Positions 15,496 through 57,849 are shown, counted from the stretch's first letter. The stretch is DNA of 58,885 nucleotides from Schmidtea nova (GCA_044892505.1 CM097883.1:135413116-135472000); one strand, 5' to 3'. Numbers and translations are program-made. Notes: generated by a model not told the origin, from the sequence alone.

Positions 15496-16218
15496 AGTAG
15501 ATTAAAATTTCGTTTAATTGACAATTAATACTTAGTTTGCGTTCGTTTCCTGTTGTCGTCGTCAAAATTCACTACACACTAGAAGAATTTCTGTTGGTTA
15601 ATAAATGGTAATTTATCAAAACCTTAGTCCACCCGTCCCTCGTATGGGAATCTTCGGAAATTAAGTTGAATCGACTTATTTATTCTACTAGGTTGATTTT
15701 TCAGCGTCCTGAGTAAGTTTTGCAATGCATGGAAATGCTCTTTTTCCCATGTTATGATTGTTAGTAAACCCCGAGAGAAAGCTTTTAGTTGAACGAAAAA
15801 TTCATTAGGCAATTCATTACGCAATTCCGCTATATACTAGTAGTGAAAACAGTAAGAATAGTTCTTGACTAGGCAAAGCACTGAGGGAACGAATTTATAA
15901 ATTAATCAGAAGCAGTTGCCGATCTCGCTTAATGGCATGTTGGTGTTCGGATAGTGGTTTTCGACTTTCCTAGGGATTGATTGAGAATTATCCATCCCGA
16001 ACAGGTATCCACGAGAATTCTTAGTCTCCCCACGTTGGTGATGTACCTATCGGCGTAGGTTGAGCAAGCAGGTGAGCTACTTTATTCGCAACTACTCCCT
16101 GCACACAATTATTCGGGTTGGTGGACCGAAAGAATGCCTGGTTTATTTTATATTCTATTCAATGGTTACTTTGAGGTTTCGATGATAGGATATGTTTAGA
16201 ATTTCCATATTGAAATCT

Positions 16219-16861
16219 TTAATAAATCAAACAGGAAGTTGACGCAAAACTTTTATTAATTAAACGAGAAGATCTATTCTTTGAAAATGGAGTGATTGTT
16301 TCCTGTAATTCGGATGCGGACAAGGTATTTAACACACTTACTTGTGCTACTAGTTGGATGGCAAAAACCCGTTTCTGCCTACGGCGCCTAGATCCCATTC
16401 GCTTTTTAGTTTTGAAGATGTCCCTGACGAGGTCTCCAATGACTTCGGTTTTTTTTGCGGGAGTCGGGCTTCCCGCATAAATCTTGCCCATATTAGTGCT
16501 GACCGACTGGAGACTTACGGTTGTCTCCCCGAGGCCCATCCATTTGAAGTGAGTGGTCATACATACGATTTCAACTTCTCATCGATAAAAGATCGGGTTA
16601 CTTGACTGAGACAGTTCCTCAGTTCTAGCTTCACCCAGTTGAGTTCAAGATGTACCTAGACGGTCGCCCTCTTTGCCCGATTGGTCAGCAATAATTGCAC
16701 CGCATCTGCGTGAGTGAAAAGTATCGCTTTTCCATCTCCAACTTCTGAGACGTCATTCGGGTGATATCTAGCCGCTAACGCTCAATCCAACGGTTCTGCG
16801 TTATCTAGAAATCTATCTTACACTCGCAACTCCAGGCTTTGGTGACGAGTTTTTCTGCCAT
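16219..16861 (-). pseudogene. ORF B paralog 1 (coiled-coil family)
   Basis: TTTTAG|aaATG start; ..KRYFSLTQMR..LELNWVKLELRNCLSQVTRSFIDEKLKSYV*PL..KRMGSRRRRQKRVFAIQLVAQVSVLNTLSASEL; several stops and frameshifts. Confidence 0.8.
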
Positions 16862-18825: not shown

Positions 18826-19227
18826 AACAACAGCAGTAGTTCATGCCTAAGCACAGCTACCTTACTCAATGAGATCACACAAAGGGTACCCCCTTTGACA
18901 TCAATTTGCAGTGATATTAAATATAAAAATCGGAAAACATCTAAAGATAATTTCCCAGCCTGCTGGCTGCTATCAAACACAACGATTTAGAAAAACTCAA
19001 TGTCCAACTGTTAGGCGAATAATATACTCCCTAACGATACATGGTCGGACCAACGAGGAAAGAATCGAGGAAAACAATATAATGATGGTAAAAGTCAATA
19101 CCACATAATGCTTTTAATTACTATTCACCATACTGGGGAGCTCTGAAAGTACGACGTAAGGTTTCTACCCACGCAGTGCTATACCACACAGGTCGTATCT
19201 ATCAACGATATTATACATGGTGCAAAG

Positions 19228-19749
19228 ATGAAGATGTCAAGAATGCAAGAGGCCCTATCTAGGACCAAGACAGAACTCGACGCGGTCCAACGGGAACTCC
19301 GAAACTGTTTGAACTCGGTGACCAAGTCGTACATCGACACCGAGTTGCAGGCCCTCATCCGGCCAATAACAGCCCAAAAATGGACAACGACTCAGACCAG
19401 GGATATTTCAATCGGAACCAATGACGAAGTTCCATTTGAGACAGCATCACCAACTCCCCAGCCCACAGTGGGGCCATCTCCAACAACTAGCCGAATCTGA
19501 CCTGGCCCACCCGTACAGCAGCTGATACATTAGAAAGAGACGGTGGGTTCCAAACAAAGGCGGAAATTCGCACGACAATTAAATGCCCAGGTGGATCTTT
19601 TAAATGAACTGACCGAGTTGGAACTCTTGGACGAAATTGTGTTGACTTTGTTGGATGACGAGGGAAGATCCATAGAGGTATTCAAAATCAATAAGTATTA
19701 TCATACAAGCAATAATAAATACCGAATTAATATTTATCTGGAAAAGTAA
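19228..19749 (+). pseudogene. ORF B paralog 2
   Basis: ELDAVQRELRNCLNSVTKSYIDTELQALIRPITAQKW..ISIGTND, then GSKQRRKFARQLNAQVDLLNELTELELLDEIV after a break. Confidence 0.8.
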
Positions 19750-20445: not shown

Positions 20446-20827
20446 AAATGAGGTCACAACTCCATAAAACCGAAAGAGCGCAGTGCGCTATTGTAGACTG
20501 GAGCTCGATGCCGTAAAAATAGAACTGAAAAACTACCGCAAGGCCGTGACCAAGTTATTCATCGAAGAGCATCTCAGAGATCAAATTCGCCCATTCACTT
20601 ATGAGGAGTGTATAGGACCTGTCGAAAACGTAAATAGTCCTACGGAGAAATCAGAAGAGAGAACGAACATCGGCTAGGTAGGACCAGTTACAGCTATCAG
20701 AAAAAATTGTATCAGCGCTAGGCGAAGACGACAAAGACAAGCTTTCGCTCAACAGTTCAACACACAAGATGATCAAATAAATTACCTCTCAGAGCTAGAC
20801 TTGCTAGCTGAAATCGTTCCATTGTAA
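20446..20827 (+). pseudogene. ORF B paralog 3
   Basis: MRSQLHKTERAQ/RLELDAVKIELKNYRKAVTKLFIEEHLRDQIRPFTY..ISARRRRQRQAFAQQFNTQDDQINYLSELDLLAEIVP; frameshift and stop. Confidence 0.78.
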
Positions 20828-21191: not shown

Positions 21192-22411
21192 ATGAATACA
21201 TTATTTTTATTAATTTCCGCGAAACTGCTAGTTTAAGAATTCCAACATCTGATTGGTCAATTCCTAATATAAAAATTTATTTCCTATAATGTAAGTATTG
21301 ATTTTTTTTGTTTTAATTCCTTAATACAGGGTTTCTTAACCGGTGAGGTATACCTCCCTTGGTGAGGTATGTTGAGGTTCCCCGAATCTCAACTTGGTAT
21401 CTTATATAAATAAATAAGATAACACTAGTTAAAAGATTTTATTCAAATATAACAAATACAAATTACCTCAAAAAATTTTTTAAAGATTTACAATGTCGTT
21501 CCTTTAATGTGTAAGTATATATATATGTATGCGTGTGTATGTGTGAATGCCTTCTGAGCTCGATATCTTGTATGCTTGAAATTATTATTTCAATAGTCGA
21601 TAACAACAATGAAATTCTTCTTACGCAAAGATTTTATGGGTGGTTTGACTGAGAAAAACGTTTGTATATATAGTTAATTTTTGTGGTCCTTAACTTCAAG
21701 TGACAAGAGTTGTTTTCTGTCAATAATATTTGTTTTTAATAAACAATTTTTCTATTTTAAATAGTACAAATAATAATTACTATATTTAGGAACATCCCTT
21801 TTACCAGCATCCCTAATGTTTAAAAATGTGATAATTTATATCAGGTTGATACTTATACCCTATTGATTATATTAATCTTCTTGTAATTTATTTCTATCTA
21901 TTTTGAATATTATTAATTATTATTTTGTTTTAATTCGTGTATTCATTCTATGAATTTTTTTTGTTTTTTAACCGCAGTGACCCCTATCTGAAAAAAATAA
22001 AGTTATTAAGTATTATTGGTATTAATATTATAGTTTTTTATCTTTACCATTGATCAAATAAATGTTGGGCCCGCCAAATAGGCTAAAATGACCAAATTAA
22101 TATAAAAGTTTAAATAATAACAAAAAAATAAATACAAAAAATATCAAAAAAGGCTAAATTAAAAATAGGAATAAAATAATAAATAATATTAAATAAATTT
22201 CCAGCAAAAGGAAAATTCAAAAATAAAACGGAAACAAGCAGTAAAGGGGGCCTGAAATAAGAATATTGGAAATTAAATAAAATTATAGTGCAAGTAATTA
22301 ATTAATTACTTTAAAAATTAGGACCACCCAGCGAGAAACCGGAAAAGGAAACAAAATAATATTTAGATTAAAATAAAATAGCAGAATCACTTTGATGGAC
22401 GGTCTGATCCT

Positions 22412-22447
22412 GATTGGTCAATCTGACCAGCCGGATCAGTATAAATA
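22412..22447 (+). promoter_or_regulatory. Inverted CCAAT + TATA core promoter
   Basis: GATTGG at 22412 and TATAAATA at 22440; the same 28-nt offset occurs in the two sister copies. Predicted 5'UTR intron 22620-22732. Confidence 0.65.
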
Positions 22448-23239
22448 CCGATCCGAAAATCCATAATTTAGCATAAATTTTGTGAGACTTAGACTTTGTG
22501 GTAAAGCATAAAATTCTGAGTACTGTAATTTAAAGCATAACTTTGAAGCCTATTTTGAGATAGAAATTCGGAGACTGATTAATTTGATCTTTTATTCGAC
22601 GAACTAACGAATTGGAACAGTAAATTTATTTTTTGTTAATATGTACCATGATTTCGTCATTATAATTTAGTCTAAGTTTTGATGTTTTATTATGATTTTA
22701 TGCATTTAATTTAATTTAATTCATGAATATAGTCATGCTTCCTCGACTGCTCACGCGGCGAGGGAGCCCGAGTCGTCGTTGTGGGGCTTCACGGTCTCAC
22801 ATGGCGGTTCAACCTTTTTATACATTGAACAATTTTTTTTGTAGTTCAATTGATTTATATGACAAACTTACGATAAATGAATTTTTCTGATTACGGTTGC
22901 ACAAAGGATGAGTCGCGAGGAGCAATAGGAAGAGTTTAGAGGGCTGTCTGATGGTGAGGGACACCCAAGGAGTACTGTGTACTCAACACCCGAGAGTTTA
23001 GTGAGACAAGTTAGATTTGAGCCCGAAGGATCGAGGGGGGTGAACTAAAAGTGGAAAGATTTCAATGTAGAATCGACATATTTTGTAAATTCATAAAGGG
23101 CCAAAGTCCGGATTTCAATCAGTTTCACATTCATCTAGTCGAAATAAAATTAAAGTTAAACAAAAAATTCGTAACATACATAAACATGCTTTAGTCGAAT
23201 TCCGATCGCGTCAGACCGCGACGGGATTCTAATCTAAAC

Positions 23240-23376
23240 CTATAAATAGAAATGTAAACCGATCGCTGTAAATAGCGCGGAAATTTAATTAAAATCTTTA
23301 GCCTGATCGCTGTAAATAGCGCAGGAATTTTGGAACTGATTTCGTTTTTTATTATCCTGATCGCTGTACATAGCGC
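23240..23376 (+). repeat. TATA box followed by three GATCGCTGTA(A/C)ATAGCGC hairpin repeats
   Basis: TATAAATA near 23241; 18-mer copies start at 23261, 23305 and 23359, each with a CGCT/AGCG stem. Confidence 0.8.
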
Positions 23377-23509
23377 AGTACGAGTTATAAATACATTATT
23401 CCGACCGCGGTACATCATGGCGGAGCTAATTCGAATTAGTAAAGATTAATTTTTTTGTTAAATGAATAATATTTATGATAAGTTAATTCGAAATAGCACA
23501 TATGTATAA

Positions 23510-23970
23510 ATCATGTACTAACCGAACTCAGGAATTCGGTAGAGGCGATCAATGAAAGGAAAACGACCGACATATTCAAGAAGCTTCCACCTCCGATTCT
23601 GCGTACGATAAACGCACAGGTGTACAAATGGCGCCGAGGATTCAACAGGAGATGCCCATTCTCCATTTGGGCAGATGGAAGTGACCGCATACTGTACCGA
23701 GGAGGCCCAGGTTGGCCAATCACCCGTGAATGGTATTCGAAACACTTCGGCCAAATGATAATACGAATAAACGATACAGAAGGAAGGCCCAACCAACTAA
23801 TCTACTGGGGACACATCCCCCGAAAGGAATTGCGTAAATTGGGGATTCATGCGTTCATTCCGCGCAAAGCATTCGGAATGGAGTGCGATGACAGACAACC
23901 CCGGTTTTCGTGGGCCAGGCTTCGTAGAACCCCTATCAATCAAGAGCTACACATTTTGTTTCAACAATAA
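23510..23970 (+). CDS. ORF A (unknown, Trp/Arg-rich)
   Basis: The frame is open upstream of the track start (HVLTELRNSVEAINERK..) through ..INQELHILFQQ, with AATAAA after the stop. Homologous fragment at 17098-17280. True start uncertain. Confidence 0.55.
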
Positions 23971-24139
23971 CGATCATTTGCGATTTAATAATAATAAATA
24001 GTTTAGTAAAAATCATGGTGTTGGTATTCGTTTTTTTTTGTTTTTGTATTCCATTTCAATAATTCAGAGAATGTTGATAAATCTAAATAACGTCTTAACA
24101 TGAGAACGATATGAAATTTAATCTAGCCAATTTGTAGAA

Positions 24140-24736
24140 ATGAATTTAGAAGCCGCCCAGAAGGAAATAGAAAAAATGTGGCGAATTCGGAGAGCCCAAG
24201 ATAAAGAGTTGGGTTTCATCAAGGAAAACTTAACCAAAGCCGAAGCGCAAATCGCTTACCTGCACAAGAGTTGGTTCGCTCCGGCTCGAATGAAAGAACA
24301 AATCGGAAAGACAGAGCGAGCACAGCGGACGGCAGATGATTTCCGAATGGAGTGGGAGGCCACCAAGATCGAGCTTTGCAAATGTCTCCACTCTGTGACG
24401 GCCTCGTATATCGAACGAGAGCTGAAAGACCTGATCAGGCCAGTAACCTATCAGGGATGGATTGCCGAAAAGAAAGTGGGAATATCAATTGGTACGGATG
24501 TCGAGGGCCTTACCGTAACGAGCGCCGAAACAAAATCGACAATTTGTGATAATACCCCCATCGTCAGTACGCATCAAAAGCGTAAAAGAATTGGCCAAAA
24601 GCGGCGCCATCAGCGAAAACTCTTCGCCCAAAAATTGCAGAGCCAGATTGAAGCATTGCATAAATTATCCGAAGAGGAATTGTTGAATGAGGTGTTTCCT
24701 CCGGAAGGAATTTTCAATGATTTTATAGAAAAATAA
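24140..24736 (+). CDS. ORF B paralog 4, intact 198 aa coiled-coil/basic protein
   Basis: Uninterrupted ORF; TGTAG|aaATG acceptor context; family motifs WFAPARMK, KIELCKCLHSVTASYIE..LIRP, RIGQKRRHQRKLFAQKL..LSEEELLNEV. Confidence 0.75.
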   Translation: MNLEAAQKEIEKMWRIRRAQDKELGFIKENLTKAEAQIAYLHKSWFAPARMKEQIGKTERAQRTADDFRMEWEATKIELCKCLHSVTASYIERELKDLIRPVTYQGWIAEKKVGISIGTDVEGLTVTSAETKSTICDNTPIVSTHQKRKRIGQKRRHQRKLFAQKLQSQIEALHKLSEEELLNEVFPPEGIFNDFIEK

Positions 24737-24942
24737 ATGAGTTTTCACAATGAGTTGATTTTCTTCTTGCTATTTCATCAGCTTATTGATTTAGTAGAAT
24801 AAGGGAAATGAATAATTTTGGGAAACATATATTTGCAAACTTCACGAGATTTTTGCGTAAAGTAAAGAAATGAATTAATTATAATTAATATAACTTCTCC
24901 AAAATTCGGACAAAGTTAATAGTTTGGTGATAAAGCGTAAGT

Positions 24943-25172
24943 CCTTCTAACGGCAGCGATGAACCCGTAAACATAAATGGGGAGTAGTACTAGCAATAGT
25001 ACTCACCTGCCCATCATTGTTTAACCACCTTGCGCATCACCAACTTGATTATCCAGGGAAATAATCAAGGGCGCTTGAGTGTAAAAATTTACGCATTTTA
25101 TGTGTGATCATGGATGAGGATCCCTAGTCATTGTTAGAACATTTTTCAACTAACCCCTCCATGAACCCAGCA
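24943..25172 (+). other. Conserved structured 3' cassette
   Basis: ATGGG-GAGTA-GTACTA(GCAA)TAGTAC-TCACCTG-CCCAT, followed by the CTTGATTAT/ATAATCAAG hairpin and ATCAC/GTGAT pairing; ends CCCAGCA. Confidence 0.75.
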
Positions 25173-33936: not shown

Positions 33937-33941
33937 AATAA

Positions 33942-38056: not shown

Positions 38057-38564
38057 CTCACAGTACATCCAGAAATAAAATATATAAATTGGAAAAAAAA
38101 TGCAATGCATCAATAAGCAAACTCACCGAGCTGGAAACAAAATGACAAGTATTAAAAATAAAATACAACACAAACGCACATACAGACTAAATTGTGATTG
38201 GTTGACGGAAGACTGCAAACCCCTATATAAGCAGCAGCAAAAATCAGTAGTTGAAGTCGTTTTAGAGAGTGGTTTAGAGAATTTTCAGAGACAAGTCAAG
38301 CCTAATTAGAATCTTGTAAAAGTCATTCTGAAAGTGTCATTGATCATTGTATACCTGAAGCAATTTGTAAATCGGAGTAAATACAGGTATTACTTGGTGA
38401 TTTTCATTTTTACCCTCATGCTGTCTCTTTTTGTTTGTTAAAATCGGTAGGATCGCGCCCCGAAGGTCTTCCGACCCGGCGGGCGACATGGGCCTCTCAG
38501 CGCAGCATCCTGTAGGTGTTGACTCATGCGGCGTTGACTGTAAGTCATTCTAAATATGGGAGGT

Positions 38565-38621
38565 TACTCATCATCCTAAATCATTATGTGCACTGCACAT
38601 AGTGATTTAGGATGATGAGTA
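38565..38621. repeat. 57-nt near-perfect hairpin
   Basis: TACTCATCATCCTAAATCATTATGTGCA-C-TGCACATAGTGATTTAGGATGATGAGTA: 28-bp arms with one T:G pair. Confidence 0.95.
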
Positions 38622-38797
38622 TTAGTAAATGCAGATGATATGACTGGGTTAACGTCACGAACAGAGATTGGGGAGCTACACTAACAGGAATTCCGTATAC
38701 TTCAAGTTTAGGCCGTTCTGTTATCGTGTCCGAAAATTAAAATATCTCCGTAAGAATTCATTGTGGCGATGAGAGAATGTCTGAGATGATTGTGGGA

Positions 38798-39215
38798 ATG
38801 ATGATACAAACTGAGATTCTGCTTGGATAAAGAGGGATTGAAACGTTTTATCAGCAGCGACGAATAAAACTATTGGAAAGTTACATCAGTCGGCAGGCAG
38901 TAGAGCTGGACACTATAAAGAGAACCTGGTTTAGTCCGGAGAGGGTAAAGGAAGTTTACCAGAAACGAGATCGTGCGGAAAGATCTAGCAGAACAGGCTC
39001 GAGAAACCGCTACAGTGAGGCTGGAGTTGAATAATTGTCTAAGGGCCTCCACAAAGGAATTCATCGAACAGCAGCTAAAACCACTGATTAGTGCAAGTAA
39101 CTTTGATCGCTGGGTAACTCCATCCCGACACAATATCGAAACGCAGACCGAGGAAAATGGAAAACCTGCCCAGGATAAAGAAGTAGCAACAGCTAGTTTG
39201 ATGTTTGAAGGGTAA
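38798..39215 (+). pseudogene. ORF B paralog 5 (C-terminus replaced)
   Basis: RRIKLLESYISRQAVELDTIKRTWFSPERVKEVYQKRDRAE/DLAEQARETATVRLELNNCLRASTKEFIEQQLKPLISASNFDRW; closest to the 49692 copy. Confidence 0.82.
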
Positions 39216-39319
39216 TTTATGGAAGGGTAATTGAAGCGAATTGATGCTGTTTTGAAGGACAAATTGGTTGATAGGAATAAAATTTTATTCGAATCATGCG
39301 TTTTTAATGGTTTAAATAT

Positions 39320-39337
39320 TGGTAGTAGAGCGTGGTT
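39320..39337 (+). promoter_or_regulatory. Probable PBS (initiator tRNA-Met type) of the BEL-like insertion
   Basis: TGGTAGTAGAGCGTGGTT resembles the TGGTAGCAGAG..GGTT complement of tRNAiMet; preceded by AATAAA and a degenerate LTR-like end. Confidence 0.55.
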
Positions 39338-39695
39338 CCCATCGGGGCGCCACGCACACTTTGGAAATCTGAGAGCTATCCTGTTAGTATATATTTTTAT
39401 TAAAAAGTCTAATATGTTTTTTGTAAATTTTTATAAATGTTTTAAATTTGTAATTGGGGTATGGATCACCATTCCCTCCAAAGCGCGTCTTGAATGGGAA
39501 ATGAGGTTAGGGAGTAAAAGGCGAAAGTTTAAGTTAATTAATGAAAGAGAAGTGAAAGTTGGAATGGCTTGGCCACCGGATATTGTGAAAGACGGCTGCT
39601 ATGGGCCTCAGCATTCTTTTAAATTCCGGGATAACATTGGTAGGGAAGGTGCTCGTAAGAGGTATCCGCATAGGGTTGGGCGAGCGAGAGAGACA

Positions 39696-41020
39696 TGGCA
39701 GATATTTGTAAAAACATTAACAGGGAAAACTATTACCCTTGAAGTTGAAGCAAGCGACATGATAGAAGATATAATGGGAAAAATTCAGGACAAAGAGGGA
39801 ATACCATCTAGTCAACAAAGGCTTAGGTATAATTACAAACTTTTAAAGGAAGGAAATAGATTGAGTGATTACATGATACATGATAAATCTACTATTCATC
39901 TATCACTGAGATTGTGTGGAGGGAATGATGAGGATGAGGAATTAGAAGAAGGATTGAGAAAAAAGAGGAGTGTTAAGTATAGGTTGACGAGATTAAGAAA
40001 TAAATGGATGAACGATATGCTGGCAGAAGATGCATCACATGTCTTTGATGAATATCAGGAAGCAATGGAAAGTACCATAGTGAGTTTTGAAAGATTGTTG
40101 GACATCAGCAAAAGATTAGGAAGGTCAGATACAACAACTGTGCTAGAAGCGGATTTAAAAGAGATTAAAGAAAAGAATGATAAGGTGGAAGAGCTAATTT
40201 CGTCAAAGGCCCATCAGTCAGTTAGATCGGATGACAACAACACCATTAAAGAGGTAGGTGGGAATGAAACAAAGAAAAGACTCGATAAAATGCAGAAGAT
40301 ACGAATTCAGATTTTTGATGGACAACATAAAGAATACGAAAGTTGGAGAGCTGCCTTCCATACTTGTGTTGATAGTGCACATGGTGAGGATGATGAAAAG
40401 ATGCTACATCTTCGATCATATTTGAAAGGTGAACCGTTAAGGTTGATCAAGAATTTAGGATTTTCTTCAACTGGTTACAAAATGGCAAAGTAAAAGCTCG
40501 ATAAAAGATATGGCGGGGAAAACGAAATTACTTAGCTGCTCTGGAAGATATCGACAGCTTCCGACCCGTTCGTGAAAATGAAATGCTGGAAATAGAGGCA
40601 TTTGTTGGATTATTGGAAACGCTAGAAGCTAGAATAATTAGTATTAGACGAGAGGACGAAATGCAGAACAGTGATTTAATGAAGAGATGCCTTAAAAAAC
40701 TACCCAGCTTGCTGCTATACAAATGGAAGAAAGATGTTAAGGAGGAAAAGGTAACCGAGTGTATCCAAGACTTAAGAAAGTGGTTACAAGATGAAGTCGA
40801 GCTGTTAAGGTCAATCAAAGAAACTCTTTATGAAGTTGGTGATGACAATAGAAGAAACAATTGGAAGAGGCAGGACGGATCGTCAAGAAACCTTGTAAAT
40901 CTAAGACAAGGGAACCGGACGCTTGTTGGACAAGTAGTGAATAGGAATGATAACAAGGCAAACATGTCAAGAAACGGAATAACGGCACTAAAATGTAAAA
41001 TAAAACATCATTTTTTACTG
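39696..41020 (+). pseudogene. Ubiquitin-like domain fused to BEL/Pao-type gag (DUF1759-like)
   Basis: Ub 39696-39923 ([23 protein letters not shown]) in frame with [39 protein letters not shown]; remnant C-K-HHFLLH knuckle near 41000. Confidence 0.85.
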
Positions 41021-42294
41021 CATAGCCCAGGAGTAAAAATGGATGACAGTAAAAAGACAGCCGAGAATCAAAATATGTCAATGGTGACATATCGAGAAGA
41101 ACAGTATGAAAAGGAATATATCGAGAGTTTTGCACCTAAAGCTCAGGAAGAAGTTTTAAGTGAAACTCAAACTGGTGATAGCGATTTGAATTCAAATAAA
41201 AATGAAGATAACTCGAAAAAGGATAATATTGCTGGTGAAATGGTTGACAACTTTAAGTCTGTCGGTATTGCAAGCGAGGATGAAATAAATAATTTTTCAA
41301 ACGAATTAGTGCAAGAAGTAAGGACGGAAATTGAATCTACAATGGTTGTGGAAGATGAGCAGGCAATGAATGAAGAAATTACTGATGAAAATTGCATTGT
41401 CGAACAGAAAATTGTTGAAAATATTAACGATATCGAAGAAAATTATAAAATTAAGGAAAATGGCGGAGAGAATTCCATTGTTGATGAAAAGATGGAGCAA
41501 GAAATATTTGAAAGGTCGAATATTAATAAAAATGATAAAATAGATGAACTGTCTTTGGTAATTGAAACTATTTCTCAGCAAGTGCAAAAATCTGTTGAGT
41601 TTCAGCAGTCACTCCAAAATTCATTTGAAACAAGTAAAGACAAAGGTGAAAAACTCATGGGAGAATTAAAAAATGTAAATTTGATAAACGAAAATTTAAA
41701 TGATAAAGATGAATTCGGAAATAGGATATAGATCTTGGAATTTGAAATAGAAGATCTTGAAATAAGATAAAAACGACTGAATTAGAATATAAAAGCGAAA
41801 TTAAAGAGTTAGAAGTAAAGTTAAAGAATTTGGCTGAAACTATAGAAACGTTATCAGTGGAGATGAGAAATGTAAATGCCATTAACGATAAATTGGCAAC
41901 GGTAAATTTGGAAATAAAAATGTCCATATGTGTGAGGATGAGTATCCAAGATAGTATAAGAGGATTAATGGTCGAAGAAAAATTCAAGGACAAAAATAAG
42001 TATTGGCCGAAATGGAAAAATAAAGTTAAGAATCAGAAGGTTCCCCCCCAGAGATGAATGGGTCAGTTGATCCGCTAGAAGCGACCAAAGCTTGCTTCTA
42101 TCTGAGCCTATGTGTGCGTTGCATGTGTGGAGTCGCGTCCGTGTGCGGTTTATAACTTAAGTTAGTTTTATTCGTGTAGTGAAGGTGAAAAGTGAAAAGG
42201 CTTAATGCTAAAAATGAAAAGGAATAACAATAAAAAACACTTGGGGTTGACACAAGGGTGGCCTTTCATTTGAAAATTAACCTCGCTTCCAACA

Positions 42295-42480
42295 AATGAG
42301 GGAATAGTAGCCGCAATGTTGCTCACCTGCCTCATTATCCTACAACGTTGATACAGTACCAACATGGTAAGCAATTAGGGGCAAGCCATGGGTATCAACG
42401 GGGAGATGTTTTTATGTTGGTGGGACTACTCACAACATCACAAAGTAAGTCTCAGTTGAAAATCTACCAACACTCCAGCA
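42295..42480 (+). other. Conserved structured 3' cassette
   Basis: AATGAGG-GAATA-GTAGC(CGCAAT)GTTGC-TCACCTG-CCTCATT; crossing helices CGTTGATAC/GTATCAACG and ACCAACAT/ATGTTGGT. Confidence 0.8.
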
Positions 42481-43009
42481 ATAATTTTAGATTCAAAGTA
42501 TTAAAAATTACAAATAAGTTCAGTAACTGACTTTTTAATTTCGGTTTTTAATTCAAACATTCTGGTTTTTAGATTTTTGTATAATTTTTCACAGTAATTT
42601 AGATCCTTTCAGTATTAAGTTAGCCGATTTAATCACGATTATGCTTTTTTTCCATCGTAAATTTATCTAATATGGCTCTAAATATACAGATACAATAACT
42701 TATCTCAATGTTTGGAGGTTAGATAACAATTTAAAAAAAATTCTAAATCAGATGTTAATTAAATTATGTTCGTAAATTTCTGTAGAATTCGTCTGAATTG
42801 CGAAATAAATCGGCATTTTCTTTTTTTCCTCGATAATACTCTAACAGGCTAAAAGGAGTATTACAAATGTATTGATATTCTAATTTTTAGTTTATATTCG
42901 CTAGATTTCGAAATTGGTGTATGTTATGTTTTATTCGATTTTACTGATACATTATTATAAATCCAAATAAAATACGATATGATAAATAAAAATACTACAT
43001 TTTTGAAAA

Positions 43010-43175
43010 GATGTTGCTCTTGGACTGGCCATCGTGAAAAATTACTTAAGAAGCACTATGGGTGAGAAGACAGATTGTAGGATATGGCGATTTTGTATAT
43101 AGAGAAAGATATTCTTAATAATATTAATACAGATAAAATAATAGATGAAATTGCAAAAAATAAAGCAAGAAGTGT
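43010..43175 (+). pseudogene. hAT C-terminal dimerisation-domain fragment
   Basis: IVKNYLRSTMG/EDRL*DMAILYIEKDILNNINTDKIIDEIAKNKAR. Confidence 0.7.
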
Positions 43176-43584
43176 ATATAAAAATAGTTATTTTCTTTAT
43201 TTTTAAATAATTTTAATTGTTGAACTAATTTTTAATATATTTTATGAAAAATTATTTGAAAAAAAAATTTGTACTAAAATTTGGATAATCTCGTTTTACA
43301 TAAACTTCGTTTAACTTGTAATGGAAACATGGAGTTGTTTGAATTTTTTAAATGTATGATAAGTAATTATGAAATTGATTCAGAAAATTTTTTATTTTTT
43401 GTCTAATTAATTTTGATGACTTGGTTATTTTTACCGCTTAGTACCCCCCATTTGACTTGATCTGCCAGCGACAATAGACAAGATTTTTAGTAGCAGTTTT
43501 GTAATTCTAACTGGTTCCTGCTAAAAGCACTAGTGCTCTTTTGATTATAATTTTTCAAATGTCAAATTAAACCTGTTTCACATG

Positions 43585-43970
43585 AGTAATTAAGCGCAAA
43601 CAAATGTCACTAGACCTAGTAACTAAAACTAAATAATTTTTATGATAGATGAAAACAAAAGTAAGAATGACATAGCAAAAATGTTCAATATCAATCAGTG
43701 AACAGTTTCGGAGATTTAGAAACAAAAAGATACAATCCTCAATGTCTACCAAAGCAACCACCTTTTTGATAATGATAAGAAAATGCGCCATTCACCTTCC
43801 GGGGAACTTGAGAATGCAATACTTAAATGGTTTTCAAACATGCGTTCCAGTAATCTTTATATCAGTGGCCCACTTTTGTCAGAGAAAGCAAACGCTTTAA
43901 TTTCCATCAATTAAAAAAAATGCATTGATTTCCGGCATGTAGCTTGGCTAAGTCAGTTCAAACAGCATTC
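43585..43970 (+). pseudogene. Tigger/pogo CENP-B-type HTH fragment
   Basis: KRKQMSL..KNDIAKMFNI..KMRHSPSGELENAILKWFSNMRSSNLYISGPLLSEKA. Confidence 0.75.
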
Positions 43971-45799
43971 AGTGATTTTGTAATAAGTCTGACTTTTTTG
44001 CCGGGACCAAATGATATTCCTGCTGTGTCCAAGAGTTCACACCAAAATCAGCTTCCGGAAAATTGGGAATGTTAGGCTACAAATGGAGTAAAGTTTCATG
44101 AAATTGTTGAAGCGGACGATGATCTAGCTACTAAAGAAATGGCGACACTAAAAAATCTTGCGTCATCGTTGTCTATTTTTCAGATAACTCAGAAATACGA
44201 AGAAGTATCAGACTGTTGGGTTGATCCTAACCCCAAAGCAAACACTGGAAAAAGAAAATAAATAAAATCAATCAATTACTCACAAATCCATGAGAGCAAT
44301 TGCGAATTGCCCGGAAAGTCTAAAACAAAAACAAATGAATTGAAGATACTCTACAACTTTAAAAAACCAACATTGGAGTGGAATTATGACTGAAGTGGAG
44401 CCCGACGGTCACTTCAGCCAATCGAGAAAATAAATAATACTGCAATTTAAAAATACTTAAGGGTGAATTTGAAGAAAAAACAAAATGAAACGAAAACAAC
44501 AATTTAAAAGCCCTCAAGAATGAATTATAAAACCATAGACCTAATCTGATTGGTCAGAAATTGATACAAAAAAAGTAGAAATACCGGGGGTATTTTCAGT
44601 TGAATTATCTCACTTTATACCATACCTTGAGTCACATTTTACTCAGTGAAGTTTGAACCTTGTGAAAGTTAAAGAATAAAAGGTAATTTGTGTTTTTGGT
44701 TCTTCATCATTATTAGCTATGTTCGGTTAACCACCCTTGTGTGTTTTTATGGGATCTAAACAATCAAAGAAACGCCTCGACAGTCTTCGGACGATAACTG
44801 GCCTCCCGACACAACGCCTTATGGGTGTTGGCCGGCGCGGCGTACAAGCGCCAAAAGCTAACGGGAAAGAAATTTGCACATAGTGAGTTGGAGAAGGGGG
44901 AGCCCACATCGCAATAACACAATTTATTAATTACCATAGGCACATAACATCAGGCAATAAATCGAGGTTAAAGGTTGCCACATGTAGAGGAAGTACACCA
45001 CAATAGGGAAATCATCACCAAATTTCCGACTAAAGAGACAGTAGTGTTGAACAAGATGGCTGGCTACAACATACACTGATAAGATCGACCAGATGATAAG
45101 AATGACTGAATGAATGAATGAATTTGAGAACAATTAAATAACTAAGGAAGGAAAATTAGCTCAAGTAATAGCCAAGAGAAAAATAACGATCGAAAAGGAA
45201 TATTAAAATTTCATGGGAAATAAGAACAAAGAATCGAAAGAAATTTTTGTTTGTCTATATTTTGGAAAATTCGTGTACTTTTTTATTGTAAAAAGGTAAA
45301 TAAAATTTGTAATTATAGTTATTGTTTTATTAAGCATCTAAGAACATACACCTGCATACAAACACGTACATTAAAAAATGACATTCACCCCAGCTATCCC
45401 AAGACAGATTTTTACCGGTGACCCGACTGGGCTCTACAGATTTTCTTACAATTGCATTGACCACATTTATTATATTTTTCATATTACATTTTCCACCTAA
45501 TTCATTACTCTATTCCCTTATATATAAATTATCACTATTCCCTCATATATAGCCCATATCATAATAATTATATTATGAATTTTAACAGTTTTTCAAAAAA
45601 TAATCTATTGTGAATTTATGATAAAAGATTATCAGCCAGTATATGAGGGTCGTAGCGGTTTCCTTGACGAGATGTACATGAAACAGAAAGTAGTGGACAA
45701 CAAAAGAATGATAAGAGCTTACAAGGACGGTAAATATGTGTTACAGAGAGATCATAAAATATAAAGAACCAAAGAAGAAAATTGGTGCTTACAAGCTAG

Positions 45800-46700
45800 A
45801 GATAAGATATTTCTACAAGATATCCCTATACTAATAGAGGAGATAACACTTGGAACATGTGAGCAGACAAATATGTGCACTCCAGAACAAAGACATGTGA
45901 CGTCATCGCATGTGTGCGTCCAATCAAAAATAAATAGGCCCCGGGCCCCCCCCCGCTTTTTGGGAAGTTGCAATAGAAGTGCAAACAAGTTGCAATGGAA
46001 ATGCAATCAAGTTGCAATTCATGATTAATACAAATACATCTTAGATAAATTTGTATAAATAATTGAAAATTTTTGATTATTTGTAAAATGAAACAAGAAA
46101 TATTTATTTGAAAATTGATTGATGGTCTCTTATCAAAAGGAAAAATATGATGATGAAAGGGCAAGGAATTTGCAATACAAGTGTGTGACTCATGTAGTAC
46201 ATGCATAACATGACATATATAGTACAAGTGTTTCATACAAGTGTAATAAGCATCAGTGATTTATACCAACAATTCAGACTTGAAATGTGAAGAGTAACAC
46301 CGAAGTTGAACCCTAGTAGCAGAACATTGGTAGCATAACCTCTTTTGTGATGGTTTTATCTGCAATAGCTTCATACTGAATATTTTGATTCAAATATCAA
46401 TATTATTGTAAAATCTTTTAATATCAATTATATTCAGTATCAGAATATTTCTAACAAAACTCTGATAGCAGAACACTAGAAGCAGAACATTGGTAACAGA
46501 ACATCTTTTGTGATGGTTTTTATCTGCACAAGCTTTATACTGTATTTCATGTATCAATAATCTCAACTATCAGAACCTTTCTAATAGAACACTAGTATCA
46601 GCACATTTGTAGCAAAACTACTTTTATGATGGTATTTATCTGCAAAATCTTAATCTAATGTTTTATTGGCAAATAAGTGTATGTGTGTGTAAATAATTAG
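45800..46700 (+). repeat. Degenerate minisatellite family (agcagaacatt / tttgtgatggtttttatctg units)
   Basis: Units at ~46320-46360, 46480-46530 and 46600-46645; the same motifs recur at ~57950-58050 and 58690-58745. Confidence 0.6.
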
Positions 46701-47262
46701 TATATATACCAGTTAATTTCTATTTATATTTTAAAATGTCCAACTTAACAACAAATGATAAATCTTTATTATTTTGAATTTATTTTTCAACATTTTAGAA
46801 AAAATAATGCAAATTTTAGTTAACAATGCAGGGGAGCTTTATCAATGTCTTTTAAAAGATTTGATATACTGGGCACCGGGAATTATACCATTTCGAATAT
46901 GGATGGTAACCGGAATAGATCTGAATGCTGTTTTATTGGAACATTTAAAGACGATTGATCAGGAACTATGGATGTATATCGATGTAAAATTTGCTTTGAT
47001 CGGTTGAAGAACTATCATGTATGGATTCTAAAAAATGAGTTGAGAAAATATCATTTTGCAACCATTGTAGATAAATGTTCAAATATTGTTGATAACTGTT
47101 CATGTGTAAATGACATGTGGCCACTTCATTTCTGACTTAAATAACTAGTAAAAGACGCTTTTGAACGCATGTTTCTTGCTTGTAGTCGATTTTTGGTTCA
47201 AAATCCTTGAAAAGTCGATGGGATTGGAATGATATATTTTCTCAGCATCGGACACTAAGATC

Positions 47263-47465
47263 NNNNNNNNNNNNNNNNNNNNNNNNNNNNNNNNNNNNNN
47301 NNNNNNNNNNNNNNNNNNNNNNNNNNNNNNNNNNNNNNNNNNNNNNNNNNNNNNNNNNNNNNNNNNNNNNNNNNNNNNNNNNNNNNNNNNNNNNNNNNNN
47401 NNNNNNNNNNNNNNNNNNNNNNNNNNNNNNNNNNNNNNNNNNNNNNNNNNNNNNNNNNNNNNNNN
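47263..47465. other. Assembly gap
   Basis: Run of N. Confidence 1.
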
Positions 47466-48846
47466 ACCATCAATCAAATTTCAAATAAATATTTTGTTGG
47501 GCCAGCCAAATCGAGCAGCATCTGAAAAATAATACACAATCAATAAAATAAATCTACAAAAAAGAACAACAAAATAAATTACCAACACCAAAAAGTAGCA
47601 AATGAGCGGTAACATCTAAAAGAAATAAAGCATTAATCAGAATAACATAAATCTTAAAAACTCACCCATGCGAATCAGATAAAATCTGAAAATGACAACA
47701 GGTGGGCGGACATCACCGAAGACCTGAAACAAAAATAAAATAAAAATTAAATCATACCAAAATAAACTTACCGCATGATTAAACAAACAAATCATTGAGT
47801 TGAGTTAGGCAGCAAAAAGCCGACAAACACAAAAGAATGACCAGACATACACACATACTCGATGCTGATTGGCCAGCCAACAACACCGGTTTAGTATATA
47901 TACTGAAGTCAAATCAGTATTGGTAATGTCATTTTTTACTGAGTGTGAACTTATCGTCACAACTTGTAAACAACTTGGAAGTGGAAATAAAAGGTAAATT
48001 CGAGTTGTGTTCTATATTATTATTTTAAACCCTCATAATCATAATTATTAATGATGTTAAAATCAATAAGGATTTTCCGGAGGCCTAACAGCCTGACGGA
48101 TTCTTGGCCTCTCGGTGCAACACATTCTCATGTGAGGTACCGATGCGGCGGGACCATAGGTGTTCTAAATATTTAGTGATCGGGAAGGGGGTAAGTGCAC
48201 ATAGGATATCTAATAACATCACGTCGATCGTAAATTCAACAGGAATAAAGGCAGTCTCGTAAGTATGATATATGTCATGGCGAGGGTTAGACAAGGGGTA
48301 GACGCATGAGGTAGGTAACATCAAGTCTATTGAAGTTTTTTTTGACGAGCGTAGAGGCAATCAAAGACATATTTGTTAGACCCGAAAACCTCGAAGACCG
48401 GAATGACATGCAGAAACGGGGGTAATGATAAATCAACCGCGCATTTCAATCATATACAGCTAGCCAGCGACCAGTATAATGAATAAGCCCGTATACAATA
48501 GGGGATCACCAAAGTTCCCGAACCCTGATGATCATTGGTAGTTAGATAACGAATGACAGGGAATGTCGATTAAGATAAATCTACGAATAATATTGTAAGT
48601 TGCGATATGCTGCTGTGTGTTGAAATAATGTTGAACTAAGAGCGGAGTGAAATGAGATTAACCAAGAATGAGTGGCTAACTACGGCCTACACCACATCAC
48701 CGTCGCTCGTAATGTAATCCACGCAATGAACTGCTGAGGCCTACTAATAAATGACCAATAATCAAGTAGGCTGATCAATATATATATACTTACGATCAGA
48801 AACAGTAGCTGACGAATAACCTAAGCACTCTTTCGTTTAGAGCAAA

Positions 48847-49482
48847 ATGGTCAAACTCGAAAAGCATACGGAGACACCCGCAGTCTCGCCGCCCGCGACA
48901 AAGGAGGGTCGCATCTTCCGAAGGAGACGACATACCCGATCTATCGTCAAGCAGGATTCTAAATCCGAAATTCAAGGGGAGAAGGACGCCCCACGACAAA
49001 TCGTCGAGATAGCGCGCCGACATCTGCGTCGATGAATGCGACGGCACATGAGTGTAGCCGCAAGCATCCCAGCCTGCGCGTTCCAGATACAACTTCGATG
49101 GGAGGGAGATGCCAATTGGGCGTCATCGTCGAACCCTCCGGAACGAAAATCTACCCAATGGTTTTATCAGTTCCTGGACGAATCCAATCAGCCCCGATGG
49201 TTACTAAGCTCGGAAGCGATGACAGGAAAAGCATTATATCAGCTTGGATACTTGCTGCTGGACAGGCCTCGGTGTGGCGACACTGGGGAAGTCCAAGTCT
49301 ACCCAAACGCTCCCGGAAGCGTCACGTTGGATCACCATCCGGAGCCCAAAGATCTTCGCCTATGGGAGGTATTCATATACCAGGGTAAGTTGAGCTGGCA
49401 CCCAGCCCCGGAGTTATACCACGAAACTGGGATCCGCCGAGATGAAAATTTCGCCGACCAGGAGCTACGGTCGTTCTGTTAA
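48847..49482 (+). pseudogene. ORF A-position gene, 211 codons with one in-frame TGA, Arg-rich N-terminus
   Basis: Track ORFs 48847-49035 and 49036-49482 are one frame split by TGA in HLRR*MRR (CGA>TGA plausible). TATATATA at ~48780 flanked by CTGATC/GATCAG; TTTAG acceptor 6 nt before the ATG. Confidence 0.6.
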
Positions 49483-49691
49483 TCAAGAGAAGGCCACACT
49501 CAGAAAATCAAAGGATCCAGTTCACCCCTGTTATAATTTAAAAATAAACGTTTAGTTGAATAGTGTTTCTGGTTTTGTTTTCGGAGTGTATGTGACGAAT
49601 ATAGGAGTAAAAATGGTTGATTGATTGTAGGAGCAAGACTAGAGAGACGGATAGATGTCCGCTACACTAATTAACGTCACATTTTATAGAT

Positions 49692-50246
49692 ATGAACGAG
49701 AACACTATCCGAGACTACAAACAGGAAGCACGCGAACACAAGGCACGCTCCAAGGTACTCGAGAGCCGCTTACATCAATTAAGCGCAGAACATCAAAGAA
49801 TAAAGACAACATGGTTCAACCCCGAGAGGATTAAAGCCATTTTACAGGCGAGGTACCGAGCAGAACAGGTTGCCGACGAGCAGGCGAGAGAAGTCGCCGC
49901 GTTAAAATTGGAATTAGCCAATTACCTAAAAGTCTCGACGCAAGAGTTTATTACGGAACAGTTACGCCCAATGATCAGGGCAAGTACCTTCAACAGATGG
50001 ATAGACTCAATAGCGGTCACTACCAGTACCCAAACCGAAACTGAAACAAATGTCACAACAACTACCGAGTCGATGAGGATAATCCCGGAAGGCTCAAAGC
50101 GGACAAAGCGACGAAACCGCCTCGGAGCCAAGAAACGTCGAGCCTATGCCGAACGCCTGGGCATCGAGGTTGATCTGCTCAGTGGACTCTCCGAGCAGGA
50201 ACTATTGAATGTGATCCGACCGTCGGTGTTGTTAAATTACAAATAA
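49692..50246 (+). CDS. ORF B paralog 6, intact 184 aa coiled-coil/basic protein
   Basis: Uninterrupted ORF; TATAG|atATG; WFNPERIK, LKLELANYLKVSTQEFI..MIRASTFNRW, RLGAKKRRAYAERL..LSEQELLNVIRP. Confidence 0.78.
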   Translation: MNENTIRDYKQEAREHKARSKVLESRLHQLSAEHQRIKTTWFNPERIKAILQARYRAEQVADEQAREVAALKLELANYLKVSTQEFITEQLRPMIRASTFNRWIDSIAVTTSTQTETETNVTTTTESMRIIPEGSKRTKRRNRLGAKKRRAYAERLGIEVDLLSGLSEQELLNVIRPSVLLNYK

Positions 50247-50412
50247 ACGTATTCTCATGAAATGACTTGATTTGTTTGCTTGTAGTATGTCTGAGTATTA
50301 AATGTAAGGTAAAACCTGATTCATTTGAGATTGTAGGTACTCTAATAACTGAATTAACCCTAGAGCAAAGGAAAGAGCGCGTTATAAAGGGACCGAAAGA
50401 AATCCACAAACA

Positions 50413-50621
50413 CCTTCTATCGGTAGTGGTGGACCCGTGAATAAACAAGGGAATAGTAGCCACAAGGTTGCTCACCTGCCTTGTCATTTCACAACGTTGA
50501 CACAGCACCAACATGATGAGTAGTTAGGGTGTCAGCGGGGGAATGTTTTTATGTTGGCGAGATCACCCTAACGTTTAACATCCTAATGATCTCAGTTGTC
50601 CAGCTAACCAACACACCAGCA
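50413..50621 (+). other. Conserved structured 3' cassette
   Basis: ACAAGG-GAATA-GTAGCC(ACAA)GGTTGC-TCACCTG-CCTTGT; crossing helices CGTTGACAC/GTGTCAGCG, CCAACAT/ATGTTGG and GTTAGGGTG/CACCCTAAC. Confidence 0.8.
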
Positions 50622-51199
50622 ATTTCTTGTTTCATTTTATAAATAATCATAAATTTTCAAGTATTTATACAAATTTATCTAAGATGTATGTGTGTATTAA
50701 TCATGAATTGCAACTTGATTGCAACTCATGAGCATGGACAACAAAAAATTGTAATACAACTATAAGTCATAAAACTACATGTCATATAGGTTATTTGTAA
50801 ACCCGTACATTTGAAACCTACCATATCCAATCTTAAACTACATTGTATTAACTATATAAAACTGATATTGTGGGGGAAAACATGTCATTTGTGAGTGCCA
50901 GTAATTAGTTATACATAGAAACCGCATTGATTTTCTCTAACAAGTAAGTTTTGGTCAACTGGTACTCAAATAAGCACTGACAATATTCTTTACTAAAATC
51001 ATCATAAAAATACTAAACAGGTGTGTTTTCACTAAACATGTATGTTTTCACCAAAATATATGTTAAATTATTTATATTAACAAATAAAATAAGCGAAATA
51101 GAGTTTACTACCCACCTAATAAAGATTCACAATAAAAATGTGATTTAATCATTGTGTTGACTTATCAGGTTCCTTTTTAATAATCAGATCAAATACCAA

Positions 51200-56890: not shown

Positions 56891-56899
56891 AGGTAGATG

Positions 56900-57845: not shown

Positions 57846-57849
57846 TTAG

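What the first reader, a model, noticed from the sequence alone, without database searches (positions are those of the whole stretch)
42295..50621. Conserved ~200-nt pseudoknotted RNA-like cassette with compensatory changes at the element's 3' end (four copies)
Seen: copies at 16064-16102 (minus), 24977-25014, 42295-42336 and 50445-50484 keep the invariant register P1-GA(A/G)TA-P2-loop-P2'-TCACCTG-P1'. The stems change sequence but still pair: P1 ACAAGG/CCTTGT, AATGAGG/CCTCATT, ATGGG/CCCAT, GCAGG/CTTGC; P2 GTAGCC/GGTTGC, GTAGC/GTTGC, GTACTA/TAGTAC, GTTGC/GTAGC. Downstream, two crossing helices form a pseudoknot (CGTTGACAC/GTGTCAGCG versus CGTTGATAC/GTATCAACG, and CCAACAT/ATGTTGG), separated by GGGGA(G)ATGTTTTT. 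An upstream C(C/A)TTCT.(T/A)CGG..ACCCG motif is shared by three copies. The G:T pairs favour the plus-strand RNA as the folding strand. I cannot match this to hammerhead, HDV, twister, pistol or hairpin cores. Inference: an unnamed functional RNA such as a ribozyme, RT-initiation/packaging signal or stability element. TCACCTG is also a U1-like antisense of a 5' splice site (CAG|GTGAG on the other strand).
Basis: partly seen in the sequence, partly recalled or inferred. Interest (0 to 1): 0.85.

Follow-up and report, generated by a model that had tools for sequence, protein, structure and literature searches.

The report
Structured 3' end of mobile element
The four look-alike stretches are the folded, conserved tail of a family of small (about 3.1 kb) jumping genes that carry one orphan protein gene; the fold is real, the claimed pseudoknot and ribozyme are not supported, and the class of the element is unclear.

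Summary
The four copies exist exactly where stated, and chance does not explain them. The hairpin P1-loop-P2-loop-P1' keeps its register while the stems covary (7 of 12 pairs changed on both sides). With the downstream helix P3, a closing helix and an inner hairpin, it forms a three-way junction: 93% of cells paired, 16 of 31 pairs compensatory, and no shuffle reaches this. The pseudoknot occurs only in the two closely related copies, and its loop strand sits in the covarying inner hairpin in three copies. No Rfam family matches.

Each cassette ends a mobile unit. Copy 47495-50621 splits one arm of an inverted repeat and has a 4-bp duplication. Copy 22063-25172 has the same ends (TGTTGGGCC...CCAGCA) and also a 4-bp duplication. 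The units have no LTRs, TIRs, RT or integrase. They share a CCAAT/TATA promoter, a probable intron with a GC-rich folded block, and one roughly 190-aa helical, basic ORF with no homologues. That ORF is conserved only at the protein level.

Best reading: a sense-strand, cis-acting RNA platform at the 3' end of a mobile element with integrase-type ends. The main rival is that the units are solo LTRs and the cassette is U5.

The parts
47495..50621 (+). Copy 6: complete mobile unit, 3127 bp, with ends TGTTGGGCC...CCAGCA
   Evidence: It interrupts one arm of an inverted repeat. The two pieces of that arm each align to the intact arm and overlap by 4 nt.
47491..47494 (.). Copy 6: 5' copy of the 4-bp target-site duplication (ATTT)
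50622..50625 (.). Copy 6: 3' copy of the 4-bp target-site duplication (ATTT)
47865..47905 (+). Copy 6: reversed CCAAT box (CTGATTGGCCA) with a TATA box about 30 nt downstream
   Evidence: The same arrangement occurs in copies 4, 5 and 7.
47986..47999 (+). Copy 6: AATAAA overlapping AG|GTAAAT. Candidate 5' splice site of a first intron, or alternatively a poly(A) signal
   Evidence: A comparable site occurs in copies 4, 5 and 7 at a similar distance from the TATA box. The reading is an inference.
48080..48170 (+). Copy 6: GC-rich conserved block containing TGGCCTCYC, predicted to fold
49666..49691 (+). Copy 6: conserved CTAAYTAACGTC...TTTRTAG just before the ATG. Candidate branch point and 3' splice site
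   Evidence: Conserved in copy 4 although the surroundings are not alignable.
49692..50246 (+). Copy 6: intact 184-aa ORF of the orphan family
   Evidence: No homologues found.
50411..50621 (+). Copy 6: whole 3' cassette. Upstream motif 50412-50436, P1/P2 hairpin 50445-50484, P3 50494-50538, tail to the terminus
22063..25172 (+). Copy 4: complete unit, 3110 bp, with the same termini and flanked by TAAA at 22059-22062 and 25173-25176
24140..24736 (+). Copy 4: intact 198-aa ORF
   Evidence: structure model
24941..25172 (+). Copy 4: 3' cassette, with the P1/P2 hairpin at 24977-25014
38075..42480 (+). Copy 5: decayed unit. It is 5'-truncated next to a hAT fragment and has about 3 kb of foreign sequence between the ORF remnant and the cassette
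38831..39212 (+). Copy 5: broken ORF remnant. One frameshift, no recognisable start, C-terminal third absent
39231..41731 (+). Foreign segment inside copy 5: a ubiquitin domain followed by a Bel/Pao-type gag-like region (weak DUF1759 match). Interrupted at least once, with no pol
42262..42480 (+). Copy 5: 3' cassette, with the P1/P2 hairpin at 42295-42336
15938..16137 (-). Copy 1: 3' cassette, with the P1/P2 hairpin at 16064-16102. The terminus reads CCAACA
16222..16700 (-). Copy 1: broken ORF remnant. One frameshift, N-terminal part missing
19147..19746 (+). Copy 2: broken ORF remnant. Two in-frame stops, N-terminus missing, no cassette left
20468..20824 (+). Copy 3: broken ORF remnant. One in-frame stop, N-terminal third missing, no cassette left
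44214..44905 (+). Copy 7: 5' part only. It has the TGTTGGG terminus, the CCAAT/TATA pair at 44546 and the GC-rich block, but no ORF or cassette
46002..46126 (.). Intact arm of the host inverted repeat, which serves as an empty-site proxy for copy 6
47263..47465 (.). Assembly gap. It lies outside all copies, in the host inverted repeat

Best explanation
The cassette is the conserved 3'-terminal cis-acting module, about 210-235 nt long, of a family of roughly 3.1-kb mobile units.

Shown:
- The units have fixed ends (5'-TGTTGGGCC...CCAGCA-3', with CCAACA in one copy), 4-bp AT-rich target-site duplications, and no terminal direct or inverted repeats.
- Each carries, in the same order: an A-rich 330-370 nt stretch, a CCAAT/TATA promoter, a GC-rich folded block, one roughly 190-aa orphan ORF, and the cassette.
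- On the ORF's strand the cassette folds into a three-way junction. It has a closing helix, an arm P1-P2 whose 5-nt/7-nt internal loop (GARUA / UCACCUG) is invariant, and an arm P3 whose loop carries the invariant CAYCACCAAC. All helices covary.

Inferred:
- The invariant loops, held on variable helices, form a protein-recognition platform on the element's sense RNA.
- The gene looks like exon 1, an intron and exon 2, so the unspliced RNA would have to be told apart from the mRNA.
- The most economical partner is the element's own protein. It is a helical hairpin followed by an arginine/lysine cluster and a leucine-rich helix, and it co-occurs with the cassette in every copy that keeps a 3' end.
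- The platform would mark that RNA for export or packaging, and/or for the start of copying at the 3' end.
- Integration then uses an integrase-type enzyme supplied in trans. This is suggested by the TG...CA ends and the 4-bp duplication.
For: - Copies and motifs are beyond chance.
- Hairpin covariation.
- Independent MFE folds of three diverged copies give the same architecture.
- The RNAalifold consensus is a three-way junction with 16 of 31 compensatory pairs, 93.2% of cells paired, 0 of 500 shuffles reaching this, and slid controls at 33-49%.
- P3 duplexes beat shuffles: p<0.0005, 0.001, 0.11 and 0.03.
- The sense strand is more stable than the antisense strand in all four copies.
- Chance matches to the two loop motifs in public data score at most 31 bits with the covariance model, against 53-65 bits here.
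- The copy 6 insertion with its 4-bp duplication. Copy 4 has the same ends and a duplication.
- No terminal repeats.
- The ORF is conserved only at the protein level and in one frame, whereas the cassette is conserved at the nucleotide level in all frames.
- Shared promoter, GC-rich block and intron 3' end.
- Protein model.
Against: - There are only four cassettes, two of them close relatives, and the consensus structure was derived from the same sequences it is scored on.
- There is no direct evidence of transcription, of the splice, or of any protein-RNA contact.
- The promoter lies about 400 nt inside the unit. An RNA started there cannot by itself regenerate the 5' end, and no known replication scheme fits a unit with integrase-type ends and no LTRs.
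- No RT or integrase gene belongs to the unit.
- A hexamer that could be a poly(A) signal sits just upstream of P1 in three copies. It could place the mRNA 3' end inside the hairpin.
Confidence: 0.55

Rival explanations
1. The 3.1-kb units are solo LTRs of very large Gypsy- or Bel/Pao-type LTR retrotransposons whose full-length copies lie outside the window. The A-rich 5' part with CCAAT/TATA would be U3, and the cassette would be the R-U5/U5 end. Its fold would act in the 5' leader of the genomic RNA (primer use, poly(A) control), and its last bases would be the integrase site.
For: - TGTNR-type 5' end, a CA 3' end and 4-bp duplications, as described for Gypsy LTRs (PMC2836005).
- A promoter near the 5' end.
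- An AATAAA followed by a GT-rich stretch shortly after the TATA box in two copies.
- No enzymes in the unit.
- Families differ in sequence except at functional motifs.
Against: - None of the 7 units or remnants in 59 kb is paired with a like copy around a gag-pol region.
- No PBS follows any 3' end and no polypurine tract precedes any 5' end.
- R plus U5 would be about 2.7 kb long and would contain a whole intron-like interval and a protein gene under selection, which is not a known LTR layout.
Confidence: 0.25
2. The units are non-autonomous cut-and-paste DNA transposons moved by an integrase-like (Ginger-type) transposase. The cassette would be a DNA-level binding region, and its RNA fold would be incidental.
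For: The TGTNR 5' end and 4-bp AT-rich duplications match Ginger2. An intron is retained in all copies. An integrase-plus-chromodomain fragment lies next to copy 1.
Against: - Ginger elements have 40-270 bp TIRs. Here the ends share at most 6-7 nt.
- Compensatory changes with strand-specific G:U pairs point to a folded single strand, not to duplex DNA sites.
Confidence: 0.07
3. The cassette is a 3'-UTR regulatory or stability element of a fast-evolving host gene family that grew by local duplication, and it is not part of a mobile element.
For: Six ORF copies cluster within 35 kb, three of them in tandem orientation. The gene-like layout has a promoter and an intron.
Against: Copy 6 is a discrete insertion with a 4-bp duplication inside another repeat. 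Copy 4 has identical termini and a duplication. Conservation runs to the exact last bases of the unit. The ORF has no homologue among 1.84 billion protein representatives.
Confidence: 0.05
4. The cassette is a self-cleaving ribozyme or a pseudoknotted catalytic RNA.
For: It is a compact junction with invariant loops.
Against: No ribozyme family matches even at permissive E-values. The crossing helix is not conserved and competes with a covarying hairpin.
Confidence: 0.03
5. The UCACCUG loop acts as a U1-like antisense to a 5' splice site, or its complement serves as a splice donor on the other strand.
For: CUCACCUG is complementary to CAG|GUGAG, and it is invariant in all four copies.
Against: There is no conserved sense-strand partner: only one copy has CAGGTGGG in its 5' part. 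The units' own candidate donors differ from the complement. No U1 model match was found. Selection on the antisense strand would not explain the sense-specific G:U pairs.
Confidence: 0.03

Closest known systems
U5 / R-U5 ends of LTRs of Gypsy and Bel/Pao retrotransposons and retroviral leaders
   Same: A terminal ...CA preceded by a structured region, a TGTNR start at the other end, a 4-bp duplication, and a promoter near the 5' end.
   Different: There is no second copy of the unit around gag-pol and no adjacent PBS or PPT. The unit contains an intron-like interval and a conserved protein gene, and the implied R-U5 would be about 2.7 kb.
Conserved 3' stem-loops of stringent-type LINEs and their SINE partners, and the R2 3' UTR fold
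   Same: A sense-strand fold at the extreme 3' end that is conserved across otherwise unalignable families. It is presumably read by the copying machinery.
   Different: There is no poly(A) or simple-repeat tail and no RT gene. The two scorable copies both have 4-bp duplications and full-length, defined 5' ends, and the termini are TG...CA.
Cis-acting RNA export or recognition elements paired with a small basic protein (Rev/RRE, Rex/RxRE, Rec/RcRE type logic)
   Same: A small helical protein with an Arg/Lys cluster and a leucine-rich helix is encoded next to a multi-helix RNA near the 3' end, in a unit that seems to make both spliced and unspliced RNA.
   Different: The resemblance is in logic only. 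There is no sequence or fold match to any such protein, no binding data, and the elements are not retroviruses.
Ginger2/Tdd DNA transposons
   Same: A TGTNR 5' end and 4-bp AT-rich target duplication.
   Different: There are no 50-180 bp TIRs and no transposase in the unit, and the 3' end is TGC... when read inwards in three of four copies.

Membership tests
Any Rfam family (including hammerhead, HDV-like, twister, pistol, hatchet, hairpin, U1, tRNA-like) | Score at or above the family's gathering threshold | tested here: not met
   There were 0 hits over the whole window. Only noise appeared at E<=5-10 around the cassette and over two whole units. ARAGORN found no tRNA.
   P3 is kept in 4 of 4 copies. 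The second helix occurs only in the two related copies, with identical letters. Its loop strand belongs to the covarying hairpin P3b in 3 of 4 copies.
Complete LTR retrotransposon | Two long terminal direct repeats | tested here: not met
   The first and last 450 nt of copies 4 and 6 show no direct similarity beyond shuffles, and neither do the terminal 40 nt.
Complete LTR retrotransposon | gag-pol (RT, RNase H, integrase) inside | tested here: not met
   No Pfam domain was found in any frame of at least 60 aa in copies 4 and 6. The gag-like piece in copy 5 is a foreign segment.
Complete LTR retrotransposon / solo LTR | TG...CA ends and a 4-6 bp target duplication | tested here: met
   Copy 6 has ATTT and copy 4 has TAAA. 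The ends are TGTTGG...CCAGCA.
Solo LTR | The same unit occurs elsewhere as a direct pair flanking PBS-gag-pol-PPT | not testable with these tools
   There is no pair in the window. The source genome is not in the searchable collections.
Solo LTR | U3-R-U5 layout: TATA, then a poly(A) signal, then a short U5 | tested here: inconclusive
   A TATA box is present in 4 copies. AATAAA followed by a GT-rich stretch lies about 90 nt after it in copies 6 and 7, but the same site reads as a 5' splice site, and about 2.6 kb still follows.
Ginger DNA transposons | Terminal inverted repeats of 40-270 bp | tested here: not met
   Inverted comparison of the ends gives nothing beyond chance. The shared TGYTGG is 6-7 nt. 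The criterion comes from PMC2836005.
Non-LTR retrotransposon or its SINE-like dependant | Poly(A) or simple-repeat 3' tail, variable duplications, frequent 5' truncation, RT in the autonomous form | tested here: not met
   The 3' ends stop at CCAGCA or CCAACA with no tail. Both scorable duplications are 4 bp. Three copies keep the same 5' terminus. No RT is present.
Rev/RRE-like protein-RNA pair | Homology or fold match of the protein, and a demonstrated RNA contact | tested here: not met
   There is no sequence homologue and no Foldseek match at E<=0.001. Contact is not testable here. This remains a working analogy only.

The most novel reading that the evidence does not exclude
A self-contained mobile element without LTRs or TIRs that nevertheless integrates with retroviral-type ends (TG...CA, 4-bp duplication). 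It keeps an intron and carries its own small basic coiled-coil protein together with that protein's structured RNA target at the 3' end. That would be a Rev/RRE-like control pair in a 3-kb invertebrate element, which matches no described transposon class.
Probability: 0.15. Interest if true: 0.85.

Novelty: new variant of a known kind. Interest (0 to 1): 0.5.

Why it matters
A new structured RNA motif with clear compensatory evolution is a useful marker. The covariance model, together with the ORF profile, would allow a whole family of otherwise unalignable elements to be annotated in the source genome.

If the units are stand-alone, they combine features that current transposon classes keep apart. 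They have integrase-type ends without LTRs or TIRs, a retained intron, and a single non-enzymatic gene kept under selection. They would also give a compact natural example of a protein and RNA platform co-evolving.

If the units are solo LTRs, they would be unusually long LTRs that carry a conserved gene. That is less surprising but still worth recording.

Tried and rejected
Searches that found nothing:
- The cassette pattern found nothing in IMG/VR or in JGI metagenomes.
- The relaxed loop-only pattern gave only chance hits in metagenomes and prokaryote genomes. I used these as a control.
- The ORF has no relative by word-indexed search, by a profile against 1.84 billion representatives, in Pfam, in PDB sequences or by Foldseek against PDB.
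- Exact look-ups of the two intact ORFs found no contig.
- The gag-like ORF has no relative.
- The hAT search showed only that the source species is not in the protein collection, so no further genomic copies could be fetched.

Ideas tested and dropped:
- Short terminal direct repeats (an R-like redundancy) and terminal inverted repeats.
- A conserved 5'-3' complementarity through CAGGTG.
- A fifth cassette at 19006-19039 (14 bits, no other motif).
- Cassettes downstream of copies 2 and 3.
- Reading the TGGCCTCYC block as a tRNA primer site. This remains untested because the window has no tRNA gene.

The places where decayed copies are interrupted could be worked out from those listings. I joined, mended or filled nothing, and this report gives counts only.

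Full report
**What the window is.** It is an AT-rich (about 26-45% GC), transposon-dense stretch of a eukaryotic genome. It holds hAT, piggyBac-like, mariner and Gypsy-type fragments and two assembly gaps. Rfam at gathering thresholds finds nothing in it, and ARAGORN finds no tRNA.

**Are the four copies real?** Yes.
- CTCACCTGC occurs without mismatch at exactly these four sites.
- A pattern joining the two loop motifs to the downstream CAKYACCAAC hits four times against 0.00 expected.
- At the DNA level only 42291-42515 and 50440-50654 align (70% over 232 nt). The other two copies share about 70 nt of motifs plus the architecture.
- A covariance model of the hairpin finds the four copies at 53-65 bits. 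The next best score in the window is 14 bits.

**Is the fold real?**
- On a gap-free alignment of the hairpin, 91.7% of cells pair and 7 of 12 pairs have changes on both sides. Two P1 positions show four different Watson-Crick pairs in four copies. No shuffle in 500 reaches any measure, and sliding the partner gives 27-56% pairing.
- Folded one at a time, three diverged copies give the same picture: the P1/P2 arm, a second arm P3 that closes just before CAYCACCAAC, and a helix joining the ACCCG region to the G-run after P3.
- RNAalifold on all four returns that three-way junction plus an inner hairpin, P3b, in three copies.
- Counted on that alignment, 93.2% of cells pair and 16 of 31 pairs are compensatory. 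No shuffle in 500 reaches this, and slid controls give 33-49% paired with at most 4 compensatory pairs.
- The caveat is that the structure was derived from the same four sequences and that two of them are close relatives.
- P3 alone beats shuffled partners with p<0.0005, 0.001, 0.11 and 0.03.
- The ORF-bearing strand folds better than its complement in every copy, because of G:U pairs.
- As an outside control, 75 metagenomic stretches that match both loop motifs by chance score at most 31 bits with the model, because they lack the helices.

**The pseudoknot.** CCAACAT/ATGTTGG can be drawn only in the two related copies, with identical letters. The homologous bases of the copy at 24977 do not pair, and the minus-strand copy has no 3' strand for it. 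The CAACNUG segment is the 5' strand of the covarying P3b in three copies. I therefore do not accept the pseudoknot.

**What the cassette belongs to.**
- Some 120-240 nt upstream of each cassette lies a member of one ORF family. Two members are intact (184 and 198 aa).
- Four members are decayed. Copy 1 has one frameshift. Copy 2 has two in-frame stops. Copy 3 has one in-frame stop. Copy 5 has one frameshift and has lost its C-terminal third.
- The ORFs are 22-39% identical to the first sequence as protein and are not alignable as DNA. Translated matches occur in one frame only, whereas the cassette matches in all three frames. The ORF is therefore coding and the cassette is non-coding.

**Boundaries.**
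- An inverted repeat has its left arm at 46002-46126. Its right arm is split into 50723-50622 and 47494-47466.
- Each piece aligns to the intact arm separately, and the two overlap by AAAT. So 47495-50621 is a discrete 3127-bp insertion with a 4-bp duplication.
- The same first 20 bases recur at 22063 (one mismatch in 13). That unit ends with CCAGCA at 25172 and is flanked by TAAA on both sides.
- A third 5' end lies at 44214.
- The ends carry no direct or inverted repeat beyond chance.

**Shared internal landmarks, in order.**
- An A-rich 330-370 nt stretch.
- A reversed CCAAT box with a TATA box about 30 nt downstream.
- An AG|GTAA site that could be a 5' splice site or, in two copies, a poly(A) signal.
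- A GC-rich block with predicted covarying pairs.
- A conserved branch-point-like CTAAY and TAG just before the ATG.
- The ORF.
- The cassette, running to the last base of the unit.

No frame of the two complete units has a Pfam domain.

**The protein.** It has no detectable relative. The model (pLDDT 82) is a long helical hairpin, a disordered linker and a basic helix followed by a short leucine-rich helix. Foldseek finds nothing.

**How it most likely works.**
- Shown: a sense-strand fold with invariant loops sits at the very 3' end of a mobile unit whose ends and duplication are of the integrase type.
- Inferred: the loops are a protein-recognition surface. Because the unit appears to make both spliced and unspliced RNA, the platform would single out the unspliced RNA for export or packaging, and/or for the start of copying. 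The element's own basic protein is the simplest partner, and the enzymes come in trans.
- Weak point: the promoter lies about 400 nt inside the unit, and no known scheme regenerates a 5' end without LTRs.
- The main rival resolves this by making each unit a solo LTR. That reading requires a 2.7-kb R-U5 holding an intron and a selected gene, and no pair is seen among seven units.
- A Ginger-type DNA transposon fits the TGTNR end and the 4-bp AT-rich duplication, but not the required TIRs.

**Assembly gap.** 47263-47465 lies in the host inverted repeat, 29 nt upstream of copy 6. Nothing described here crosses it. Whether its two sides are continuous cannot be told from the window.

**Limits.** No further genomic copies could be obtained, because the source species is not in the searchable collections.

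Noticed in passing
window 39231-41731 (+): A ubiquitin domain (Pfam E=6e-21) that keeps its C-terminal Gly-Gly sits directly upstream of a Bel/Pao-type gag-like region (weak DUF1759 match). This looks like a captured ubiquitin fused to a retrotransposon gag. The segment replaces the ORF's C-terminus and the spacer of copy 5.
   Followed up: partly
window 8249-8559 and 8560-8870: A perfect (100%) 311-bp tandem duplication inside a Gypsy-type RT/RNase H ORF. It is either a very recent event or an assembly artefact.
   Followed up: no
window 5712-7382 (-): An intact 556-aa hAT transposase. Its closest named relatives (72-73% identity) are in a bee and in a ray-finned fish, which suggests a horizontally spreading hAT lineage. 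A second, decayed copy lies at about 36869-38060.
   Followed up: partly
window 26315-27415 and 33939-34609: Direct repeats 92-96% identical and about 7.6 kb apart, the first one interrupted. With the strong negative GC skew between them, they look like the LTR pair of a minus-strand LTR retrotransposon.
   Followed up: no
window 14352-15212 (-), next to gap 15350-15495: An integrase-core fragment followed by a chromodomain. This would be a chromovirus-type pol 3' end, or a Ginger-like gene. It starts about 100 nt after the 3' terminus of copy 1.
   Followed up: partly
window 48080-48170, 44780-44870, 38450-38540, 22740-22810: A second conserved, GC-rich, apparently structured block inside the putative intron of the units. 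It contains TGG(G)CCTCYC, and its variable positions are all transitions, as if it paired with a fixed RNA partner.
   Followed up: partly
window 56899-58885: A long array of diverged tandem repeats (satellite-like) running off the end of the window.
   Followed up: no
window 46002-46126 with 47466-47494 and 50622-50723: An inverted repeat of at least 127 bp (94% identical) that was the target of copy 6. Its inner part is hidden by the assembly gap, so the kind of element is unknown.
   Followed up: partly
window 21249-21280: A further copy of the CTGATTGGTCA-plus-TATA promoter motif without a recognisable 5' terminus. It may be a remnant of an eighth unit into which copy 4 inserted.
   Followed up: no
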